DNA of 64,000 nucleotides. It comes from Diadema antillarum (Eukaryota). Both the position numbers and the translations under genes were made by a program. The stretch lies in assembly GCF_040938485.1 (NCBI RefSeq), contig NW_027272389.1, forward strand, positions 496,001 to 560,000. The letters are read 5' to 3'. This document shows, piece after piece, positions 1,085 to 64,000 of the stretch. A model generated the notes under the pieces. That model was not told the origin of the DNA. It ran no database searches and worked only from the letters and a program-made list of their open reading frames with translations. Each line of letters starts with the position of its first letter. Within the stretch, counting starts at the first letter, position 1.

Positions 1085-1395
1085 TTATTACCCACGCCGA
1101 TGAAAATCGGCAGGGGGTTNNNNNNNNNNNNNNNNNNNNNNNNNNNNNNNNNNNNNNNNNNNNNNNNNNNNNNNNNNNNNNNNNNNNNNNNNNNNNNNNN
1201 NNNNNNNNNNNNNNNNNNNNNNNNNNNNNNNNNNNNNNNNNNNNNNNNNNNNNNNNNNNGAACGGGTAAACGGATTTGCACGAAATGTTCAGGGGATGTC
1301 TGGATAATGACAGGAAAGAATCGATTAGATTTTGGTGATAATCGGTTGACCCTTACAAATTCTGTGCGACCTTTAAGTTTTGACCCCATGGTATA
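1085..1395 (+). mobile_element. Helentron/HINE-like non-autonomous element, 5' fragment spanning a gap
   Basis: ttattacccacgccgatgaaaatcggcagggggtt 5' hairpin; the gap sits where the microsatellite is expected; body resembles other HINE-like copies. Confidence 0.45.
1120..1259. other. Assembly gap / masked run (140 N)
   Basis: N run. Confidence 1.
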
Positions 1396-6862: not shown

Positions 6863-7227
6863 ATTACCTCCACCAGCTGAGGTTNNNNNNNNNNNNNNNN
6901 NNNNNNNNNNNNNNNNNNNNNNNNNNNNNNNNNNNNNNNNNNNNNNNNNNNNNNNNNNNNNNNNNNNNNNNNNNNNNNNNNNNNNNNNNNNNNNNNNNNN
7001 NNNNNNNNNNNNATGATGTCAAAGGTCAATGGTTCTGGGGTTATGAAGGACATAAAATAAGCTTGAAATCTAGCAATAACTCAAGAACGGATTATCAGAT
7101 TTTTACCAAATGTATTATATAGATGTCCCTGTACCTCTATGTATGTGTTTGAAGATATTGCATACAAAATGGCGATAGCCTAATCATGCATGGTTACTTG
7201 GAGGTCTGCTCTCTCAGAGTGCTTCTC
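6863..7227 (+). mobile_element. HINE-like element spanning a gap
   Basis: 5' attacctccacc...gaggtt before the gap; 3' end ggaggtctgctctctcagagtgcttct resembles the ends at 6385-6418 and 25217-25260. Confidence 0.55.
6885..7012. other. Assembly gap / masked run (128 N)
   Basis: N run. Confidence 1.
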
Positions 7228-21719: not shown

Positions 21720-21890
21720 NNNNNNNNNNNNNNNNNNNNNNNNNNNNNNNNNNNNNNNNNNNNNNNNNNNNNNNNNNNNNNNNNNNNNNNNNNNNNNNNN
21801 NNNNNNNNNNNNNNNNNNNNNNNNNNNNNNNNNNNNNNNNNNNNNNNNNNNNNNNNNNNNNNNNNNNNNNNNNNNNNNNNNNNNNNNNNN
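21720..21890. other. Assembly gap / masked run (171 N)
   Basis: N run following GATA-rich sequence. Confidence 1.
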
Positions 21891-56591: not shown

Positions 56592-56923
56592 TACACCTAT
56601 ACTTTTACTAAAATATGAATCACACTCTGGAGAGATGAAACAAATTATATTTATAGTATAATCATTTCTCCATTTTTTTCTTCTTCTTCTTTCTTTCTTT
56701 CTTTGTATTCTGTTTTTGTTCTTGTTTTTTCAAAATGCAAAAAGTTACACTTGGAATCATTGATCCTGTCCACCCAACTTCCCCCTTTTAGATCTTTATT
56801 ACACTGTACATGATGGAATATATAATAATTTACAGTGAACACATCAAGTGTATGCAAAATATAATGATAAACTGATGGGCTGCAGCTGCACACAAAAGGG
56901 CATTGTCCTACAATATATATATA

Positions 56924-59461
56924 TGTGAGGGTCACAGTAATATCAGCACTCACCCCCCCCCCCTTTCCTGTGATGATTACACTCGCTCATTATATTATGT
57001 AGTATTTATATGTATGTTTATCTATTTGATTCTCTATCCACACATGTAGGTGCATGATATATCACAGTACTCTAGTTGTATAGTAGAGGTACATACACGG
57101 TGGTGTAAGGTCAGGAGGTAATTTACATAATCATGGGAAACACCCCCCCCCCCCATAAGTGGAATCTCCCTGTGAGGGGGTAAAGCGTGTCCTAAAGTTA
57201 TTCAGAAGGGGCACCTCCTTTGATCATTCTTGAGAAGGCGTCCAAGCAGGCAACGTCACTTTAATCAACCTGCTCCTGTGGCTGTAGCATAGTCCCGTCC
57301 CTCATCCTTTGTACAAAGGTAAGAACATCTGTATGATGTGTCTTTGATATTTTATATTGATTAACATCATAATTTATGTGGTGTTCATTATATTACACAT
57401 GATAATTTGAGAGTGTTTGGTTTTGCCAAATAATTAATGGATGAGGTTTCATTCACAAACGAGTGGTTAATGAGGATGGCATGTCAGTTGCCCATGAAGT
57501 GCATTAGCGACTTAGAATTTATAGTTCTGTTCTATCTATGTTTTATATCTATGCTTTAGTGTTATCAATATGAAGTGATATTGGTAGGGAACATCACTTA
57601 CAGCAAGCTTGATGAAGGACTGTAGATGTTTCTTATTTCATCTTTATTCTATGTGACTTTGAGAAGCGTGCTTGATGCAGAGGGTAGCATAGAATATAGC
57701 GCTGTGGTGTATGGAGATAAAAGCTAAGTGTTCACACAGCCCGATGTACACTATAGTTGATTTTGGTAGGCACGCTAGAGGATTAAAAACAAAGGACAAT
57801 GAACTTGGCCCCAGTACAGGGGATGATACAATATGCTGGTAGGTGCCTCGGCTTACAAAGGGTGACTGCCTTAAAGCAGTGGCTACATTCCAAAGACTGT
57901 TCTTTTTATGTTTACTGCTTGGCAAACTTCCTCTCTAACTATTTCAAAGACTTGGGTTGATGTGTACTATGCACTGTGCACCCCTATTGATGAAGATGTA
58001 GGCAAGCTGCTCTTTGTTTCTATTATGAGCGAAGGAGGTAGCTAGTAAGATTGAGTTCAGGCAGGAAAGCCTCTACGCCCATTGACGCATGTACAATATA
58101 TTTCAAGTTGCTAGATATAGGAAATAGGAATATATATCCCTTGTACATATGTATCTATCTTTTGTATATAATTATGTCTATTACTGTGCTATCCTAGCGA
58201 AGGCAACTGATCAGTCCTTTGAGTATAGCTTTCAAACCGCTGTATGATGCATTATTTTATCGGTTAATATAGTTAGCACTGGTTTATTAGTACAGTGAAC
58301 GATGCTTGGGTCGAATAATTCGATTTGTTCATCATAAACACAAGCACATATTTGATTTCATTCATAGATTCCTAACATGGGGAAAGATTTAAGAAAGTAT
58401 ATTCATTTGCATTGTCAATTTTAGAAGACACCAAGACTTCTGTCAAGTGGATGGACCCCAGCGCACTGCACATGCTGTAATGTCAGAGGTGAATAGTTTT
58501 TTCTCAATATTGTGTCTCATATCTTGTATGGTAATGAAATCAACAGGCGGAATATTACTATGACATAATAATTATTATGTTTTGCATTCTTGGAGTTTAC
58601 TTTTCAGATGGCTTTGCCTCCTTGAATCAAATAATGTTGTTACTGTTGTTGATAGAAGATATAGAGTTTGCCTGTCATGGAAGTTTGACGATAGTGCATT
58701 AACGCTATTGAGTCCGTGTGACATATGTATTTGGTTGCAGGCGACAATCATATCGTACATTCAAAACTGTATGGTTTTACAGATGAATTGCGTATCAACG
58801 AAAGCTTGAATAATCAAACATTACCAGCTTTAATTCAGATAATACAATGTATTGTAATGTTCACATATTGGAAAATACATATTGTAAATACACATGTCGC
58901 TGCGTTATGTAAATATGAGTGTGTAAAGTAACGAGATGATTGGTTCATCCCTTGTGTTATGTAGCTTCTGTGGGAAAGGGACACGGACTTGCTGTATTCT
59001 GCGTCGGACAGTGTTGCGTTGTTATTCGTTGCTTGTTGCGTTGCATTTTGTTATTTTTAAATGTTGCTCTGTTATTAGCCACTTTTAACCGTTTGCTTTA
59101 GATTCGTTGCGTTGCTTTTAAGAGCTGTTGTTGCATTGCCTCTTGTTGCTTTTAGTGTTGTTTTGTTATTAGTTGTTTTTAATTTGCTATAAGTTGCTTT
59201 TCGTTGTTTTAAACTTGTTTGTTTTGCGTTCAGTCTAATGTTACAATTTTGGAGTTATTTGAGTTTTGGCTTAGTTTGAAATACTGCAACAAAGTGAAGT
59301 AATAAAGACACCTTTTTTTTTTGTAACAGAAACAGAAAAATTATCTTTGAGCATTCCTTCTTTTCCCAGTCCTTATTAAATAGAACCAGGTGATTGATTT
59401 TGTCTAATTGAGTCTGAGCTATTGTAGGTCAACACTGACTGGACGTGTCCAGCCGGTCACA
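56924..59461 (+). repeat. 5' LTR (2538 bp)
   Basis: TGTGA...TCACA termini; followed by the PBS; AATAAA at 59301; duplicated from 62548. Confidence 0.9.
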
Positions 59462-59467
59462 TAATTT

Positions 59468-59486
59468 TGGTGCCGAAACCCGGGAT
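59468..59486 (+). other. Primer-binding site complementary to the tRNA-Phe 3' end
   Basis: TGGTGCCGAAACCCGGGAT is the 19-nt reverse complement of eukaryotic tRNA-Phe ...AUCCCGGGUUUCGGCACCA. Confidence 0.92.
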
Positions 59487-59590
59487 TACTGAAAAGAAGG
59501 AAGCTCGCATAGACTTAAACTCTAAATTGATTAATAAGTTGATAAGGTTTAAAGAAATAGCAACGCAACACTGTCTAATTAGTCGTCAAG

Positions 59591-60683
59591 ATGGCCTCTC
59601 CCATTCCACCGAGTGATGTGAGAACTCCAACAGACGATCCCCGCAGCATGCCGAGAGCGACGTCGACGCCGGAGCCGATGACTCCAGCTACGTGGCAGTA
59701 CCCAAGGCCAGCTGTGACCCCGCTTCAGATGGCAGGATTTGACCCCGTTCCTGAGCCGACACAGAGACAGGACCAGTTCATTACGCCGAGGCTCGTGGTG
59801 TCTCATCAAGTCAAGGGTGTCAATGTCTTCACAGGTAAGGGGGGAGTAAAAGTAGAGGATTGGGTGCGTGATATGAAGTATTTCATAGAATCTAAGGGCC
59901 CAATGCCGCCACAAATGCAGTTCAATGAAATTGTTAGGCACACAGGGGGAAGAGCGCGGGACCTCATCCTGAATTTGGAGCTCCGTGGTGACGAGGAGAT
60001 GACGCCTTCGCTGGCTTTCCGAGAGCTTCTCGACGAGTTCGGGGACCACGACATCGCCCATGGCAAGCTTCTATGCCCGAACTCAGCAGGCCAGCGAAAC
60101 TCCATCCGAGTACGCTGTCGCACTGGAGGCAAAGCTGAGGATCGCACGAGATAAGGGGGACCAAGCGGCAATGGTTGAAAAGCCCGTGCGGGACGCTATG
60201 CTTACTACCCAATTCATGTTCGGCTTGAGGGACCAGAAGGTCAAGGCTCGTCTAGCCCCGATGAGACCGAGGGAAATGACATTTCGAGAACTTAGATGGG
60301 AGTTGCACGTAATCGAATCAGAGGGGCGTCTGACCTCGGCCCAGGTATACAGGCAAGATGTGAAGGAGGCGTCGAAGGATGCACAGACGATAGAGCAACT
60401 CACTAGGAGTATTCAAGAGCTGGCCGCCACACAGCATCAGCATATGGATCTGTTCCATAGGGTAGTTGAAGACCAGCAGAGGAGGATTGCTGAATTCGAG
60501 AGTAAGTTGCAGCAACAATGGATTCCCCGAGGTGGCAGTCGGAGAGGGAGAAGAAGAGGTGGTGGGCAAACACAACATAGCAATGCTTGCTATACCTGTG
60601 GACAGCCTGGCCACTATTCACGGACTTGTCCCAATCGACAAAACTCGCAAGGCTTCCGTGGACCTCAGCATCCTTTAAACTAG
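59591..60683 (+). CDS. gag: Gag (PNMA-like capsid plus CX2CX4HX4C knuckle at 60588-60629), split by a +1 frameshift near 60047
   Basis: ORFs 59591-60154 and 60060-60683 give ...LDEFGD/TTSPMASFYARTQ...QFMFGLRD...CYTCGQPGHYSRTC. Confidence 0.88.
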
Positions 60684-60713
60684 TTCGACCTGCAGACGAG
60701 GGGCAGTCTGTGG
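60674..60713 (+). promoter_or_regulatory. -1 programmed ribosomal frameshift signal (T TTA AAC plus stem-loop)
   Basis: Heptamer 60674-60680 ends at the gag TAG; the pol ORF is in the -1 frame; 8-nt spacer, then cctgcagac / gtctgtggg stem. Confidence 0.8.
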
Positions 60714-62488
60714 GTGCATTCAACAAACGTAGCCCTGGAAGAACTGGATCAAGCTACCAGACGCAGGTGACAACGGGGAATAACACTGGTGAGGAGGAGC
60801 TTGTGGTGTCCTGGACCCCTTCCTCAGATGTGAAACAAGCATTAGACATGCCAGTCGATACAGCAGCAGAGCAGACGAAGGATGACTCACCCTTGCATCA
60901 GGCGGCAGCCAGCCACAACGTTAATGTTACACCTGCAGAGCAACATGATGATGGCTCATCTACTTTGTTGGCAGGCGTAGGTGTGGAAGAGCTTGCACGG
61001 CTGCAGAGAGAGGACGTCATTATCAGCCGAGTTGTCGAGCTCCTTCAAGCCGGACAGAGACCAGCCTCACGTCAGTTGCGAAGGGAAGCAATCGTTGCTC
61101 GCTTGCTGCTTCGACAGTGGGATAGACTGCACGTGTGCGAGAATGGCGTACTATGGTATAGTAGAGGAGATCGTAGACTACTCGTTCTGCCTAAAGGTCT
61201 GAGGAAGCTGGCTCTCCGTAGGGCACATGTTGAAATGGGACATCTTGGGCTTGACAAGACTTTGGCACTCATGCAGGACAGATTCTACTTACCTGGCATG
61301 AAGACAATAGTCCAGCAGTACATCCAGAGGTGTCGAAGGTGCACTGTCCGGAAGACGACGGAAGCAAAGTCCAAAGCCCCACTTCAACCCATCAAGTCAA
61401 GCAGACCACTTGAACTGGTATGTATCGATTTCCTTAGTTTGGAGACATCACGGGGAGGCATAGAGAATGTCCTGGTGGTCACGGACCACTTTACTCGCCA
61501 CGCCCAAGCTTTTCCTACTAGAGACCAGTCTGCTCAAACAGTGGCTAGGACTTTGTGGAGCAGGTACATAGTTCACTATGGCATACCTGAACGCTTCCAT
61601 AGTGATCAAGGCAGGTGTTTTGAGGCAGCTCTAGTACGCGAGTTATGTGAACTACTTCACATACAAAAGAGCAGGACAACGCCGTATCACCCACAGGGGA
61701 ATGGAATGACCGAACGTTTCAATGGTACACTCCTTAATATGCTAGGAACACTGGAGCCATCGCAGAAGCCGAACTGGAAGGAGCACGTTGAGTCTCTCAC
61801 CCACGCATATAATTGCACCAAACATGCATCGACAGGCTTTTCCCCATTCTCTTTGATGTTTGGAAGAGAGCCACGTATCCCCCTTGACCTCATCGGCACA
61901 CCCCCGGAAGATGACGACAAATCCATCTCCAACTATGTCGACGAGCTTCGCCTTACTCTCCAAGAGGCTTATCGAAATGCCCACGAAAATGCCGAAAGTG
62001 CTCGCGCCAAGCAGAAAGGCACGTATGACAGGAAAGCCAAGGATGCTCCCTTTGAACATGGAGATAAGGTACTCGTAGCACATAAGGCACTGATAGGTCG
62101 TCAAAAGCTGGCTGACAAATGGGGTGAGTCTCCTTACACTGTGATACGCAGGCTGCCAGACCAGGATGTCTACACTGTCAGAGAGGACAGTACAGGCAGA
62201 GAGCGGACTCTTCACAGGAATATGCTGACTGCGTGCACATTTTTGCCGGGTAGCAGTGAAAGTGAAGACGATGCTGATGAAGACAGTACAAATGTATCGA
62301 GTGAAGAGGATGGCAGTATTGCTCGTGTGGACCCAAGTTCGAGTCATCCTCCAGGGAAGAAGCGCAGTGAAGTCGATTCAAATCGTCAGCGGCGCTCATC
62401 GAGAACACGACGATCTCCCCAAAGATATGGAGGCCCAACCTCTTCCCTCAGGGTGCAACAAATACGACCTCGACTAAATTCAATTTAA
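60674..62488 (+). CDS. pol: Internally deleted pol: linker plus intact integrase (no protease, RT or RNase H)
   Basis: H-X4-H-X29-C-X2-C; CIDF, HSDQG and MTERF with D(35)E spacing; GPY/F-like WGESPYTV; RRSSRTRRSPQRYG tail; no DTG/DSG or YxDD motif. Confidence 0.93.
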   Translation, partial: FKLVRPADEGQSVGAFNKRSPGRTGSSYQTQVTTGNNTGEEELVVSWTPSSDVKQALDMPVDTAAEQTKDDSPLHQAAASHNVNVTPAEQHDDGSSTLLAGVGVEELARLQREDVIISRVVELLQAGQRPASRQLRREAIVARLLLRQWDRLHVCENGVLWYSRGDRRLLVLPKGLRKLALRRAHVEMGHLGLDKTLALMQDRFYLPGMKTIVQQYIQRCRRCTVRKTTEAKSKAPLQPIKSSRPLELVCIDFLSLETSRGGIENVLVVTDHFTRHAQAFPTRDQSAQTVARTLWSRYIVHYGIPERFHSDQGRCFEAALVRELCELLHIQKSRTTPYHPQGNGMTERFNGTLLNMLGTLEPSQKPNWKEHVESLTHAYNCTKHASTGFSPFSLMFGREPRIPLDLIGTPPEDDDKSISNYVDELRLTLQEAYRNAHENAESARAKQKGTYDRKAKDAPFEHGDKVLVAHKALIGRQKLADKWGESPYTVIRRLPDQDVYTVREDSTGRERTLHRNMLTACTFLPGSSESEDDADEDSTNVSSEEDGSIARVDPSSSHPPGKKRSEVDSNRQRRSSRTRRSPQRYGGPTSSLRVQQIRPRLNSI

Positions 62489-62547
62489 ATGTTGTTGTTT
62501 TCTTATCTACATTGTTGAGGACAACAATGGTTTTAAACGGTGGCAAA

Positions 62548-64000
62548 TGTGAGGGTCACAGTAATATCAGCACTCACCCCCCCCTTTCCTGTGATGATTA
62601 CACTCGCTCATTATATTATGTAGTATTTATATGTATGTTTATCTATTTGATTCTCTATCCACACATGTAGGTGCATGATATATCACAGTACTCTAGTTGT
62701 ATAGTAGAGGTACATACACGGTGGTGTAAGGTCAGGAGGTAATTTACATAATCATGGAAAACACCCCCCCCCCCCATAAGTGGAATCTCCCTGTGAGGGG
62801 GTAAAGCGTGTCCTAAAGTTATTCAGAAGGGGCACCTCCTTTGATCATTCTTGAGAAGGCGTCCAAGCAGGCAACGTCACTTTAATCAACCTGCTCCTGT
62901 GGCTGTAGCATAGTCCCGTCCCTCATCCTTTGTACAAAGGTAAGAACATCTGTATGATGTGTCTTTGATATTTTATATTGATTAACATCATAATTTATGT
63001 GGTGTTCATTATATTACACATGATAATTTGAGAGTGTTTGGTTTTGCCAAATAATTAATGGATGAGGTTTCATTCACAAACGAGTGGTTAATGAGGATGG
63101 CATGTCAGTTGCCCATGAAGTGCATTAGCGACTTAGAATTTATAGTTCTGTTCTATCTATGTTTTATATCTATGCTTTAGTGTTATCAATATGAAGTGAT
63201 ATTGGTAGGGAACATCACTTACAGCAAGCTTGATGAAGGACTGTAGATGTTTCTTATTTCATCTTTATTCTATGTGACTTTGAGAAGCGTGCTTGATGCA
63301 GAGGGTAGCATAGAATATAGCGCTGTGGTGTATGGAGATAAAAGCTAAGTGTTCACACAGCCCGATGTACACTATAGTTGATTTTGGTAGGCACGCTAGA
63401 GGATTAAAAACAAAGGACAATGAACTTGGCCCCAGTACAGGGGATGATACAATATGCTGGTAGGTGCCTCGGCTTACAAAGGGTGACTGCCTTAAAGCAG
63501 TGGCTACATTCCAAAGACTGTTCTTTTTATGTTTACTGCTTGGCAAACTTCCTCTCTAACTATTTCAAAGACTTGGGCTGATGTGTACTATGCACTGTGC
63601 ACCCCTATTGATGAAGATGTAGGCAAGCTGCTCTTTGTTTCTATTATGAGCGAAGGAGGTAGCTAGTAAGATTGAGTTCAGGCAGGAAAGCCTCTACGCC
63701 CATTGACGCATGTACAATATATTTCAAGTTGCTAGATATAGGAAATAGAAATATATTTCCATTGTACATATCTATCTATCTTTTGTATATAATTATGTAT
63801 CTTACTGTGCTATCCTAGTGAAGGCAACTGATCAGTCCTTTGAGTATAGCTTTCAAACCGCTGTATGATGCATTATTTTATCAGTTAATATAGTTAGCAC
63901 TGGTTTATTAGTAGAGTGAACGATGCTTGGGTCGAATAATTCGATTTGTTCATCATAAACACAAGCACATATTTGATTTCATTCATAGATTCCTAACATG
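62548..64000 (+). repeat. 3' LTR (partial)
   Basis: Matches 56924-58379 with 11 substitutions and a 3-nt C-run difference by manual alignment. Confidence 0.97.

What the first reader, a model, noticed from the sequence alone, without database searches (positions are those of the whole stretch)
59462..62547. Gypsy element encoding Gag plus integrase but no protease, RT or RNase H
After the gag frameshift site, a single 604-codon frame runs through a roughly 100-aa low-complexity linker directly into a complete integrase (HHCC, D,D35E, GPY/F-like, basic tail) with no stops. The in-frame loss of PR-RT-RH, with PBS, slippery site and near-identical LTRs retained, suggests recent mobilisation by a helper RT. 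It may represent a stable non-autonomous lineage supplying its own Gag-IN, rather than a one-off deletion. That interpretation is inference.
Basis: partly seen in the sequence, partly recalled or inferred. Interest (0 to 1): 0.85.

Follow-up and report, generated by a model that had tools for sequence, protein, structure and literature searches.

The report
Gag-plus-integrase non-autonomous gypsy retrotransposon lineage
This is a jumping gene of the gypsy type that has cleanly lost its protease, reverse transcriptase and RNase H but kept its coat protein and integrase. It has still copied itself to at least five places in this animal genome, most likely by borrowing the missing enzymes from full-length relatives that carry the same end signals.

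Summary
Window 56924-64000 carries an LTR retrotransposon with 2.5-kb LTRs that differ by 14 substitutions in 2534 aligned bases. It has a PBS, a gag with a CCHC knuckle, a U_UUA_AAC slippery site with a hairpin, and a 604-codon frame ending in a complete integrase (HHCC, D-58-D-35-E, GPY/F-like). Pfam finds no PR, RT or RNase H.

Six full-length partners in the same genome have identical LTR termini, spacer, PBS and PPT region. They carry PR-RT-RH exactly where this element has a net 2238-bp (746-codon, in-frame) gap.

The same junction (60797-60816) occurs in 8 assembly copies at 5 distinct loci. These copies are 94-100% identical and fall into two subclades. Flanks are locus-specific, all in (TA)n, with TATA duplications at the two loci where both ends were read.

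So this is a propagating non-autonomous lineage, not a one-off deletion or an assembly collapse. Fixed differences between the two subclades are mostly synonymous in the lineage-specific gag C-terminal half (16 syn, 10 nonsyn; p about 1e-5), which points to selection on Gag.

The integrase also looks constrained, but it recombines with the helpers, so whether the lineage needs its own integrase is open. In this particular copy gag is frame-broken.

This is a new variant of a known kind; compare GAG-only plant elements and mouse IAP I-delta-1. Other first-reader notes report further non-autonomous LTR derivatives elsewhere in this genome.

The parts
56924..59461 (+). 5' LTR, long form (2538 bp), starts TGTGAGGG and ends GGTCACA
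   Evidence: Offset-5621 self-match and sequence reading. K2P 0.0055 to the next LTR. The LTR ends are identical in full-length partners.
59468..59485 (+). Primer binding site TGGTGCCGAAACCCGGGA, preceded by the 6-nt spacer TAATTT (59462-59467)
   Evidence: Read. Identical, or with one change, in all deleted and full-length copies. The tRNA-Phe assignment is from memory only and could not be verified.
59591..60154 (+). gag, N-terminal part. The frame ends early in this copy because of an 8-nt length difference near 60047.
   Evidence: ORF list. Lesion map. Other copies have one 370-codon gag frame.
60060..60683 (+). gag, C-terminal part in the original gag frame, with a CCHC zinc knuckle. Stop TAG at 60681-60683.
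   Evidence: Pfam zf-CCHC, E 1e-6. Bases 60240-60796 are a lineage-specific divergent island, 69-83% identical to the helpers.
60674..60715 (+). -1 frameshift cassette: slippery U_UUA_AAC (60674-60680), 7-nt spacer containing the gag stop, then a 10-bp-stem hairpin (60688-60715)
   Evidence: Frame reading. Fold (the 117-nt stretch as a whole folds no better than shuffles, z -0.56). Kept in all 8 deleted and 6 full-length copies, with one compensatory C-G / U-A pair.
60674..62488 (+). Truncated pol frame, 604 codons: 41 aa of pol N-terminus, the junction, about 125 aa of linker, the integrase, and a basic tail
60797..60816 (+). Deletion junction. Full-length partners carry 2258 bp (PR, RT, RNase H; pol aa about 100-851) where this element has 20 bp. 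Short AGCT(T/C)GT microhomology lies at both breakpoints.
   Evidence: BLAST against a full-length copy. Identical junction in all 8 deleted copies. Domain positions.
61190..61357 (+). Integrase zinc-binding domain (HHCC: H214, H219, C249, C252)
   Evidence: Pfam Integrase_H2C2, E 5e-17. Residues located.
61400..61813 (+). Integrase catalytic core (D281, D340, E376; D-58-D-35-E)
   Evidence: Pfam rve and rve_3. Residues located.
62123..62137 (+). GPY/F-like motif (GESPY) of the integrase C-terminal domain
62503..62547 (+). Region just upstream of the 3' LTR where the polypurine tract is expected. It is not strongly purine-rich.
   Evidence: Read. Conserved in all deleted and full-length copies with few changes. 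Its function is inferred from position only.
62548..64000 (+). 3' LTR. It continues past the window to extended coordinate 65081 and also serves as the 5' LTR of a second, 99.6% identical internal unit.

Best explanation
The element belongs to a non-autonomous deletion-derivative lineage of a Ty3/gypsy-type LTR retrotransposon family that is, or very recently was, active in this 1.75-Gb animal genome.

Shown:
- One ancestral in-frame deletion removed PR, RT and RNase H (pol aa about 100-851). It left the LTRs, PBS, gag, the -1 frameshift cassette, the RNase H-to-integrase linker, the integrase and the region upstream of the 3' LTR.
- The deleted form sits at five or more loci and splits into two subclades.
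- Full-length relatives with identical cis signals are present. Their LTR pairs are as similar as those of the deleted copies.
- The deleted and full-length forms are mosaics of each other, apart from an island around the junction.

Inferred:
- The deleted RNA is transcribed from its LTR and translated into Gag and, by -1 slippage at U_UUA_AAC, a protease-less Gag-linker-integrase fusion.
- It is packaged into particles together with helper Gag-Pol. The helper protease processes the proteins.
- The helper RT copies the deleted RNA from the shared PBS. Template switching between co-packaged RNAs produces the mosaicism.
- The DNA is integrated into (TA)n with a 4-bp TATA duplication.

Gag of the lineage has stayed under purifying selection, so it most likely contributes its own Gag. 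Whether its own integrase is used is undecided. The copy in the window is itself already damaged, because its gag frame is broken.
For: Junction and partners:
- The junction is identical in 8 copies. These lie at 5 loci with different flanks, and TATA duplications are seen at the two loci read at both ends.
- The partners carry PR, RT, RH and IN in the gap.
- LTR termini, spacer, PBS and PPT region are identical in both forms.

Timing:
- LTR-pair K2P is 0.003-0.0055 for the two deleted loci measured and 0-0.0066 for three full-length copies.

Genealogy:
- The two forms are split by 0.21 substitutions per site in 60240-60796 (100/100 support).
- After the junction the split is only 0.016.
- In the PBS and gag N-terminal segment a full-length copy nests inside a deleted subclade (98/98 support).
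- Sliding identity shows the same island of divergence.

Selection:
- Fixed differences between the deleted subclades in the gag C-terminal half are 16 syn and 10 nonsyn (pN/pS 0.17, binomial p 1.2e-5). In the integrase core they are 8 syn and 0 nonsyn.
- Pairwise NG86 omega is 0.18-0.22 for the gag C-terminal half and 0.05-0.12 for the integrase core.

Copy state:
- Frame-breaking lesions are private to each locus, so the progenitors may have had both frames open.
- The slippery site and hairpin are kept in all copies.
Against: - No RNA data exist for this organism in the runs offered, so transcription and frameshifting are not shown.
- The short public contigs did not visibly bridge the junction in an independent run.
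- Only five loci and one internal branch carry the selection signal.
- The constraint on gag or the integrase could have been imported by recombination with autonomous elements, sampled or unsampled.
- gag is broken in this copy and at one other locus. The truncated pol frame is broken at two loci.
- Without its own protease, the fusion protein depends on helper processing at sites that were not identified.
Confidence: 0.85

Rival explanations
1. The lineage is a purely cis-acting parasite. It is mobilised in trans as described, but its Gag and integrase reading frames are dispensable passengers. The low dN/dS reflects sequence repeatedly re-imported from autonomous elements by template switching, not selection on the deleted element's own proteins.
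For: - There are no fixed differences between the deleted and full-length forms in the gag N-terminal part or the integrase core.
- Tree topologies conflict between segments.
- C48 and C758d are 99% identical in gag but only 95% identical in the integrase part.
- Several copies have broken frames.
Against: - The gag C-terminal half (60240-60796) has no close counterpart in any full-length copy found; all 20 candidates were scored.
- That same region still shows 16 syn and 10 nonsyn fixed differences between the deleted subclades, p 1e-5.
- The lesions are private to single loci, so they are compatible with decay after insertion.
Confidence: 0.3
2. The lineage has a chimeric origin. The divergent island around the junction was imported from another, unsampled gypsy family in the same template-switch event that made the deletion. 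On this reading the large divergence in the gag C-terminal half (dS about 0.9) measures the distance between families, not the age of the lineage.
For: - Identity changes sharply at about 60240 and about 60870.
- There is microhomology at the junction.
Against: - No donor family was found in this genome. Families 2 and 3 are no closer in the island.
- Even on this reading, the two subclades share the junction and have diverged by dS 0.25-0.28 under constraint, so the lineage is still old relative to its insertions (LTR K 0.003-0.006).
Confidence: 0.25
3. This was a one-off deletion after insertion, later copied by segmental duplication, or an assembly collapse.
For: - Three of the eight assembly copies (C1501a, C1501b, C600) are one locus, and C48 and C76 are another.
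- So some of the apparent copy number comes from haplotigs or duplications.
Against: - C289, C1554 and C758 have their own flanks. C289 has its own TATA duplication and its own near-identical LTR pair.
- The copies differ by up to 6% yet share the junction to the base.
Confidence: 0.03

Closest known systems
Mouse IAP I-delta-1 (1-delta-1) proviruses
   Same: A common deleted form with one defined internal deletion that fuses gag and pol frames into a novel fusion protein. It is non-autonomous, needing Gag and Pol in trans from full-length elements, yet it is a major source of new insertions (PMC6466679).
   Different: IAP is a mammalian endogenous retrovirus, not a gypsy element. Its 1.9-kb deletion removes part of gag and pol. 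Here gag is untouched and PR-RT-RH is excised cleanly, leaving a whole integrase. Mobilisation and a cis effect of the fusion protein were shown experimentally for IAP. Nothing was tested here.
[quoted passage not shown]
   Same: An autonomous and a non-autonomous pair with identical PBS, identical LTR termini and conserved LTR. The non-autonomous partner keeps an open gag and is thought to contribute Gag. Recombination between lineages occurs by template switching (PMC11302176; PMC13570524).
   Different: Those elements lack RT and integrase. This one keeps a complete integrase behind a working-looking frameshift cassette, and it lives in an animal genome. In sugar beet, families with pol remnants carry 'partly decayed' domains. 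Here the integrase frame is open at three of five loci.
LARD and TRIM elements
   Same: LTR elements without their own reverse transcriptase, mobilised in trans.
   Different: LARDs and TRIMs have no coding capacity. This lineage keeps two protein-coding parts under apparent constraint.
Domesticated gypsy integrase genes (GIN1-like; many database hits are labelled 'Gypsy retrotransposon integrase-like protein 1')
   Same: An integrase open frame without RT.
   Different: Those are single host genes without LTRs. This one has LTRs, a PBS, target duplications and multiple copies, so it is a mobile element and not a domesticated gene.

Membership tests
Ty3/gypsy-type LTR retrotransposon | Long terminal direct repeats with TG...CA ends, flanked by a short target duplication | tested here: met
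   LTRs at 56924-59461 and 62548 onward, starting TGTGAGGG and ending GGTCACA. TATA lies on both sides at C1501 and C289. The target is a TA repeat, so the duplication length is only weakly determined.
Ty3/gypsy-type LTR retrotransposon | pol domain order PR-RT-RNase H-IN | tested here: met
   Met in the full-length partners: Asp_protease_2, RVT_1, RT_RNaseH, Integrase_H2C2 and rve, in that order. The window element itself has only the last of these.
Ty3/gypsy-type LTR retrotransposon | Gag with a CCHC knuckle; integrase with HHCC, DD35E and a GPY/F module | tested here: met
Ty3/gypsy-type LTR retrotransposon | PBS complementary to the 3' end of a host tRNA | tested here: inconclusive
   The PBS starts with TGG and looks like the complement of animal tRNA-Phe (from memory). 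Four pattern searches of the genome and ARAGORN on the three hits found no matching tRNA gene.
Autonomous / non-autonomous LTR partner pair (criteria as used for Cereba/Quinta, PMC11302176) | Identical PBS, identical LTR termini and a conserved LTR in both partners, with one partner lacking RT | tested here: met
   (PBS, spacer, termini, PPT region). (LTR ends 92-100% identical). (domains).
Autonomous / non-autonomous LTR partner pair | Independent insertions of the non-autonomous form | tested here: met
   Five loci with distinct flanks. The two loci measured each have their own near-identical LTR pair.
Autonomous / non-autonomous LTR partner pair | Actual trans-mobilisation by the partner's proteins | not testable with these tools
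   Inferred only. This needs an experiment.
TR-GAG / LARD / TRIM | No pol-derived coding domain (TR-GAG: gag only; LARD and TRIM: none) | tested here: not met
   A complete integrase is present.
Domesticated integrase host gene | Single-copy locus without LTRs or target duplication | tested here: not met
   LTRs, PBS, TSD and multiple copies are present.

The most novel reading that the evidence does not exclude
This is a long-lived 'half-autonomous' satellite retrotransposon. It is selected to make its own Gag and its own integrase, delivered as a protease-less Gag-integrase fusion by a conserved -1 frameshift. It outsources only protease, RT and RNase H to a helper. The island of divergence in the Gag C-terminal half marks a specialisation, for example preferential packaging of its own RNA or better exploitation of helper particles. 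That island is maintained against constant recombination with the helper.
Probability: 0.3. Interest if true: 0.65.

Novelty: new variant of a known kind. Interest (0 to 1): 0.5.

Why it matters
Non-autonomous LTR elements are usually described either as coding-dead (LARD, TRIM) or as Gag-only. This lineage shows a third stable state in an animal genome: structural protein plus integrase, with the whole replication block cut out in frame.

It offers a natural test of which retroelement proteins must act in cis and which can be borrowed.

The mosaic pattern gives genomic evidence for co-packaging and template switching between a parasite element and its helper. Identity to the helper is near-complete everywhere except an island around the deletion junction. 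That island could be used to date such partnerships.

The practical value is modest. The finding improves repeat annotation of this genome, where such copies would otherwise be scored as damaged full-length elements.

Tried and rejected
- **First bulk fetch:** Small end pieces were fetched instead. The C289, C76 and C48 end pieces missed the LTR ends, because those copies have short or rearranged LTRs. The flanks were read from loci already held.

- **Reads:** no run on record as RNA holds the stretch. Logan contigs are short unitigs, and two of them stop at 60800. Neither expression nor an independent bridge over the junction could be shown. One adapter-flanked 86-nt piece in a run guessed to be RNA (X17) is not evidence of transcription.

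- **Cross-species search for the deleted architecture:**
  - The 633-aa frame has no close relative in the protein database; the best hit is 56% identical.
  - The gag C-terminal search found an 82%-identical 207-aa protein on a 1.4-kb marine metagenome contig. By its C-terminus it looks like the helper gag type, judged by eye.
  - A 62% relative sits in ordinary full-length elements.

- **tRNA identity of the PBS:** four pattern searches and ARAGORN gave nothing.

- **Outgroup polarisation of integrase changes onto the deleted-lineage branch:** only 2 usable changes, so no power.

- **Donor for the divergent island:** families 2 (C1276, C587, C113) and 3 (C419, C361) are no closer than the helpers.

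- **Family 3:** this looked like another deletion derivative, but it has no open frames of 120 aa or more in its gag part and was dropped.

- **Frameshift region fold:** the 117-nt region as a whole is not more stable than shuffles (z -0.56). Only the local hairpin and its conservation are cited.
Full report
**Anatomy**

A direct repeat at an offset of 5621 bp starts at 56924 and again at 62548, and runs to the end of the window. Sequence reading shows that the repeat starts TGTGAGGG and ends GGTCACA. The 5' LTR is 56924-59461 (2538 bp). It is followed by a 6-nt spacer (TAATTT) and a PBS, TGGTGCCGAAACCCGGGA, at 59468-59485. The internal region is 59462-62547 (3086 bp, the finding's coordinates).

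ORF listing and Pfam give:
- gag in two pieces, 59591-60154 and 60060-60683, the second with a CCHC knuckle;
- a long frame, 60587-62488, with Integrase_H2C2 and rve;
- no protease, RT or RNase H at E<=0.1.

The gag frame ends ...CCU UUA AAC UAG. This places the canonical slippery heptamer U_UUA_AAC at 60674-60680 in the zero frame. The -1 frame reads on for exactly 604 codons. A 10-bp-stem hairpin starts 7 nt after the heptamer.

The integrase has HHCC, D281/D340/E376 with spacings of 58 and 35, GESPY, and a basic tail.

**Corrections to the observation**

- gag in this copy is not intact. An 8-nt length difference near 60047 (gag codon about 153), relative to copies with a single 370-codon gag frame, splits it.
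- The 'linker' is about 170 aa, not about 100.
- The window holds only the first unit of a tandem LTR-internal-LTR-internal-LTR. The second internal unit is 99.6% identical, and the three LTRs differ pairwise by 14-16 substitutions.

**What is missing, and the partners**

The window's genome (1.75 Gb) was searched with the internal region. Eight collinear copies at 94-100% identity were returned. Six further copies had the query split after base 1335 by about 2.26 kb.

After merging their loci, four of these six have uninterrupted gag (370 codons) and pol (1404-1408 codons) frames, and two are broken. Pfam places Asp_protease_2, RVT_1, RT_RNaseH, Integrase_H2C2 and rve, in that order, in one such pol.

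Alignment of the window against a full-length copy gives these results:
- The partner has 2258 bp where the window has 20 bp (60797-60816).
- The net difference is 2238 bp, or 746 codons, so it is in frame.
- The gap runs from about 10 aa before the protease domain to about 20 aa after the RNase H domain.

All eight deleted copies have the same junction to the base. Both breakpoints in the full-length form carry AGCT(T/C)GT, a short microhomology compatible with template switching or end joining.

**Independent insertions**

- C600 has the same flanks as the window locus (98-100% identical flanks). It is the same insertion, either a haplotig or a duplicate.
- C48 and C76 likewise share their upstream flank.
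- C289 has its own flanks and TATA on both sides.
- C1554 has its own 3' flank.
- C758 carries a deleted unit in tandem with a full-length unit, sharing one LTR.

That makes five loci. Every flank read for deleted and full-length copies lies in a (TA)n tract directly before the TG of the LTR.

LTR-pair distances are 0.0055 (window locus) and 0.003 (C289) for deleted copies. They are 0, 0.001 and 0.0066 for three full-length copies. Both forms therefore inserted in the same recent period. An assembly collapse or a unique post-insertion deletion cannot produce diverged copies with one junction at different sites.

**Shared cis signals**

The last 30 nt of the LTR, the spacer, the PBS, the 45 nt upstream of the 3' LTR and the first 30 nt of the LTR are identical or nearly so in deleted and full-length copies. 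This meets the published criteria for an autonomous and non-autonomous pair (PMC11302176).

LTR length is polymorphic in both forms. The variants are a 2.5-kb form, a form of about 1 kb lacking LTR positions 395-1498 and 1565-2038, and a form of about 0.8 kb.

**Mosaic history**

Sliding-window identity between the window element and the full-length copies runs as follows:
- 94-100% over the shared LTR parts, the PBS and the gag N-terminal part;
- 69-83% from about 60240 to the junction;
- 80% just after the junction;
- 94-100% through the integrase.

The island is shared by all deleted copies. It is no closer to two other related families in the genome. A gag-only search scored all 20 candidates and found no full-length copy of the island type.

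Maximum-likelihood trees agree:
- In 60240-60796 the two forms are separated by 0.21 substitutions per site (100/100 support).
- After the junction the separation is only 0.016.
- In the PBS and gag N-terminal segment, a full-length copy nests inside one deleted subclade (98/98 support).
- C48 and C758d are 99% identical in gag but 95% identical in the integrase part.

The simplest reading is repeated recombination between deleted and full-length RNAs. This is expected if they are co-packaged. The sequence linked to the junction is the only part that cannot be swapped without restoring full length. An alternative is that the island was imported from an unsampled family when the deletion arose.

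**Selection**

Copies were projected onto an open reference frame, and gapped or stop codons were skipped.

NG86 estimates for the gag C-terminal half:
- between the two deleted subclades, dS 0.25-0.28 and omega about 0.2;
- between deleted and full-length forms, dS about 0.9 and omega about 0.1.

Only differences fixed between subclade 1 (C1501, C289, C1554) and subclade 2 (C48, C758d) must have arisen in replicating lineages. Counting those gives:
- 16 synonymous and 10 nonsynonymous in the gag C-terminal half (pN/pS 0.17, binomial p 1.2e-5);
- 8 synonymous and 0 nonsynonymous in the integrase core (p 8e-6).

Because the gag C-terminal half has no known full-length counterpart, its constraint is best explained by selection on the lineage's own Gag.

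For the integrase the same signal is ambiguous. There are no fixed differences between deleted and full-length forms in the core, and recombination is evident. An attempt to polarise the changes with an outgroup had no power.

Frame-breaking lesions are different at every locus. This fits decay after insertion from progenitors with both frames open.

The slippery site, the stop, the spacer length and the hairpin are kept in all copies, inside the otherwise divergent island. The closing pair is C-G in the deleted form and U-A in the full-length form.

**Mechanism**

Shown:
- the structure;
- the multiple insertions;
- the partners;
- the mosaicism;
- the constraint on gag.

Inferred:
- transcription from the LTR;
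- translation of Gag and, by -1 slippage, of a Gag-linker-integrase fusion that has no protease of its own;
- co-assembly with helper Gag-Pol;
- processing by the helper protease;
- reverse transcription by the helper RT from the shared PBS, with template switching;
- integration into TA repeats.

The native RNase H-to-integrase linker is retained. A natural cleavage site upstream of the integrase may therefore still be present, but this was not tested.

**Comparison with the literature**

- Mouse IAP I-delta-1 is the closest in logic. It is a defined deletion, makes a novel gag-pol fusion, is non-autonomous and is highly successful (PMC6466679).
- Plant Quinta, Sabrina, WHAM and TR-GAG elements keep only gag (PMC11302176).
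- In sugar beet, some non-autonomous families keep decayed pol remnants (PMC13570524).
- A full-text search for 'gag and integrase' together with 'non-autonomous' and 'retrotransposon' found no paper. This is weak evidence of absence.

I therefore file it as a new variant of a known kind.

**Limits**

- The organism is coded. Run labels, and another agent's note calling the genome a sea urchin's, are hints only.
- There are no RNA data, and short public contigs did not visibly bridge the junction.
- One run of a second coded organism holds the lineage-specific gag part at 93% identity. This suggests the lineage is not confined to one species label.
- The N runs in the window (1120-1259, 6885-7012, 21720-21890) were left untouched.

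Noticed in passing
window 56924-64000 and on to contig C1501:566701 (L031); compare L002 with L032 and L033 (C600): At this locus the element is a tandem LTR-internal-LTR-internal-LTR. The two internal units are 99.6% identical, and the three LTRs differ pairwise by 14-16 substitutions. Contig C600 carries the same insertion, with the same flanks, as a single unit. This is either a structural polymorphism between haplotypes or an early unequal exchange.
   Followed up: partly
L008, L012 and L017 (contig C758:455530-467821): A full-length unit and a deleted unit lie head to tail and share one LTR. The outer LTRs of the full-length unit differ by 9%, so the array arose by recombination between two elements rather than by one insertion.
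   Followed up: partly
5' flanks of all copies, e.g. window 56905-56923; L004:440-502: Every insertion of this family whose flank was read sits in a (TA)n tract, and TATA lies on both sides where both ends were read. This is a strong target preference for TA dinucleotide repeats.
   Followed up: partly
window 57318-58421 and 58422-58961 (inside the 5' LTR): The LTR length is polymorphic. The 2.5-kb form has two extra segments that are absent from the roughly 1-kb LTRs of most other copies, in both deleted and full-length forms. The first segment occurs at 10 or more further loci at 91-96% identity. These may be solo LTRs or LTRs of other elements.
   Followed up: partly
L024-L027 (contigs C419 and C361): A related family is about 82% identical in gag and 79% in the integrase tail. 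It has only about 2.1 kb between the gag part and the integrase tail, which suggests another deletion derivative with a different junction. It has no open frames of 120 aa or more in the gag part. It may correspond to another first-reader note (s1-208774).
   Followed up: partly
window 60688-60715: The closing pair of the frameshift hairpin is C-G in the deleted lineage and U-A in the full-length copies and family 2. This is one compensatory change. One copy has a U-G wobble, and family 3 has a C/A mismatch.
   Followed up: partly
window 57644-57925 and 63265-63546, minus strand: A 93-codon open frame lies inside each LTR. It is a mechanical ORF with no domain evidence sought.
   Followed up: no
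genome-wide: No gene matching the expected 3' end of a tRNA complementary to the PBS was found by four pattern searches. Three sites with the 16-nt core are not tRNA genes by ARAGORN.
   Followed up: partly
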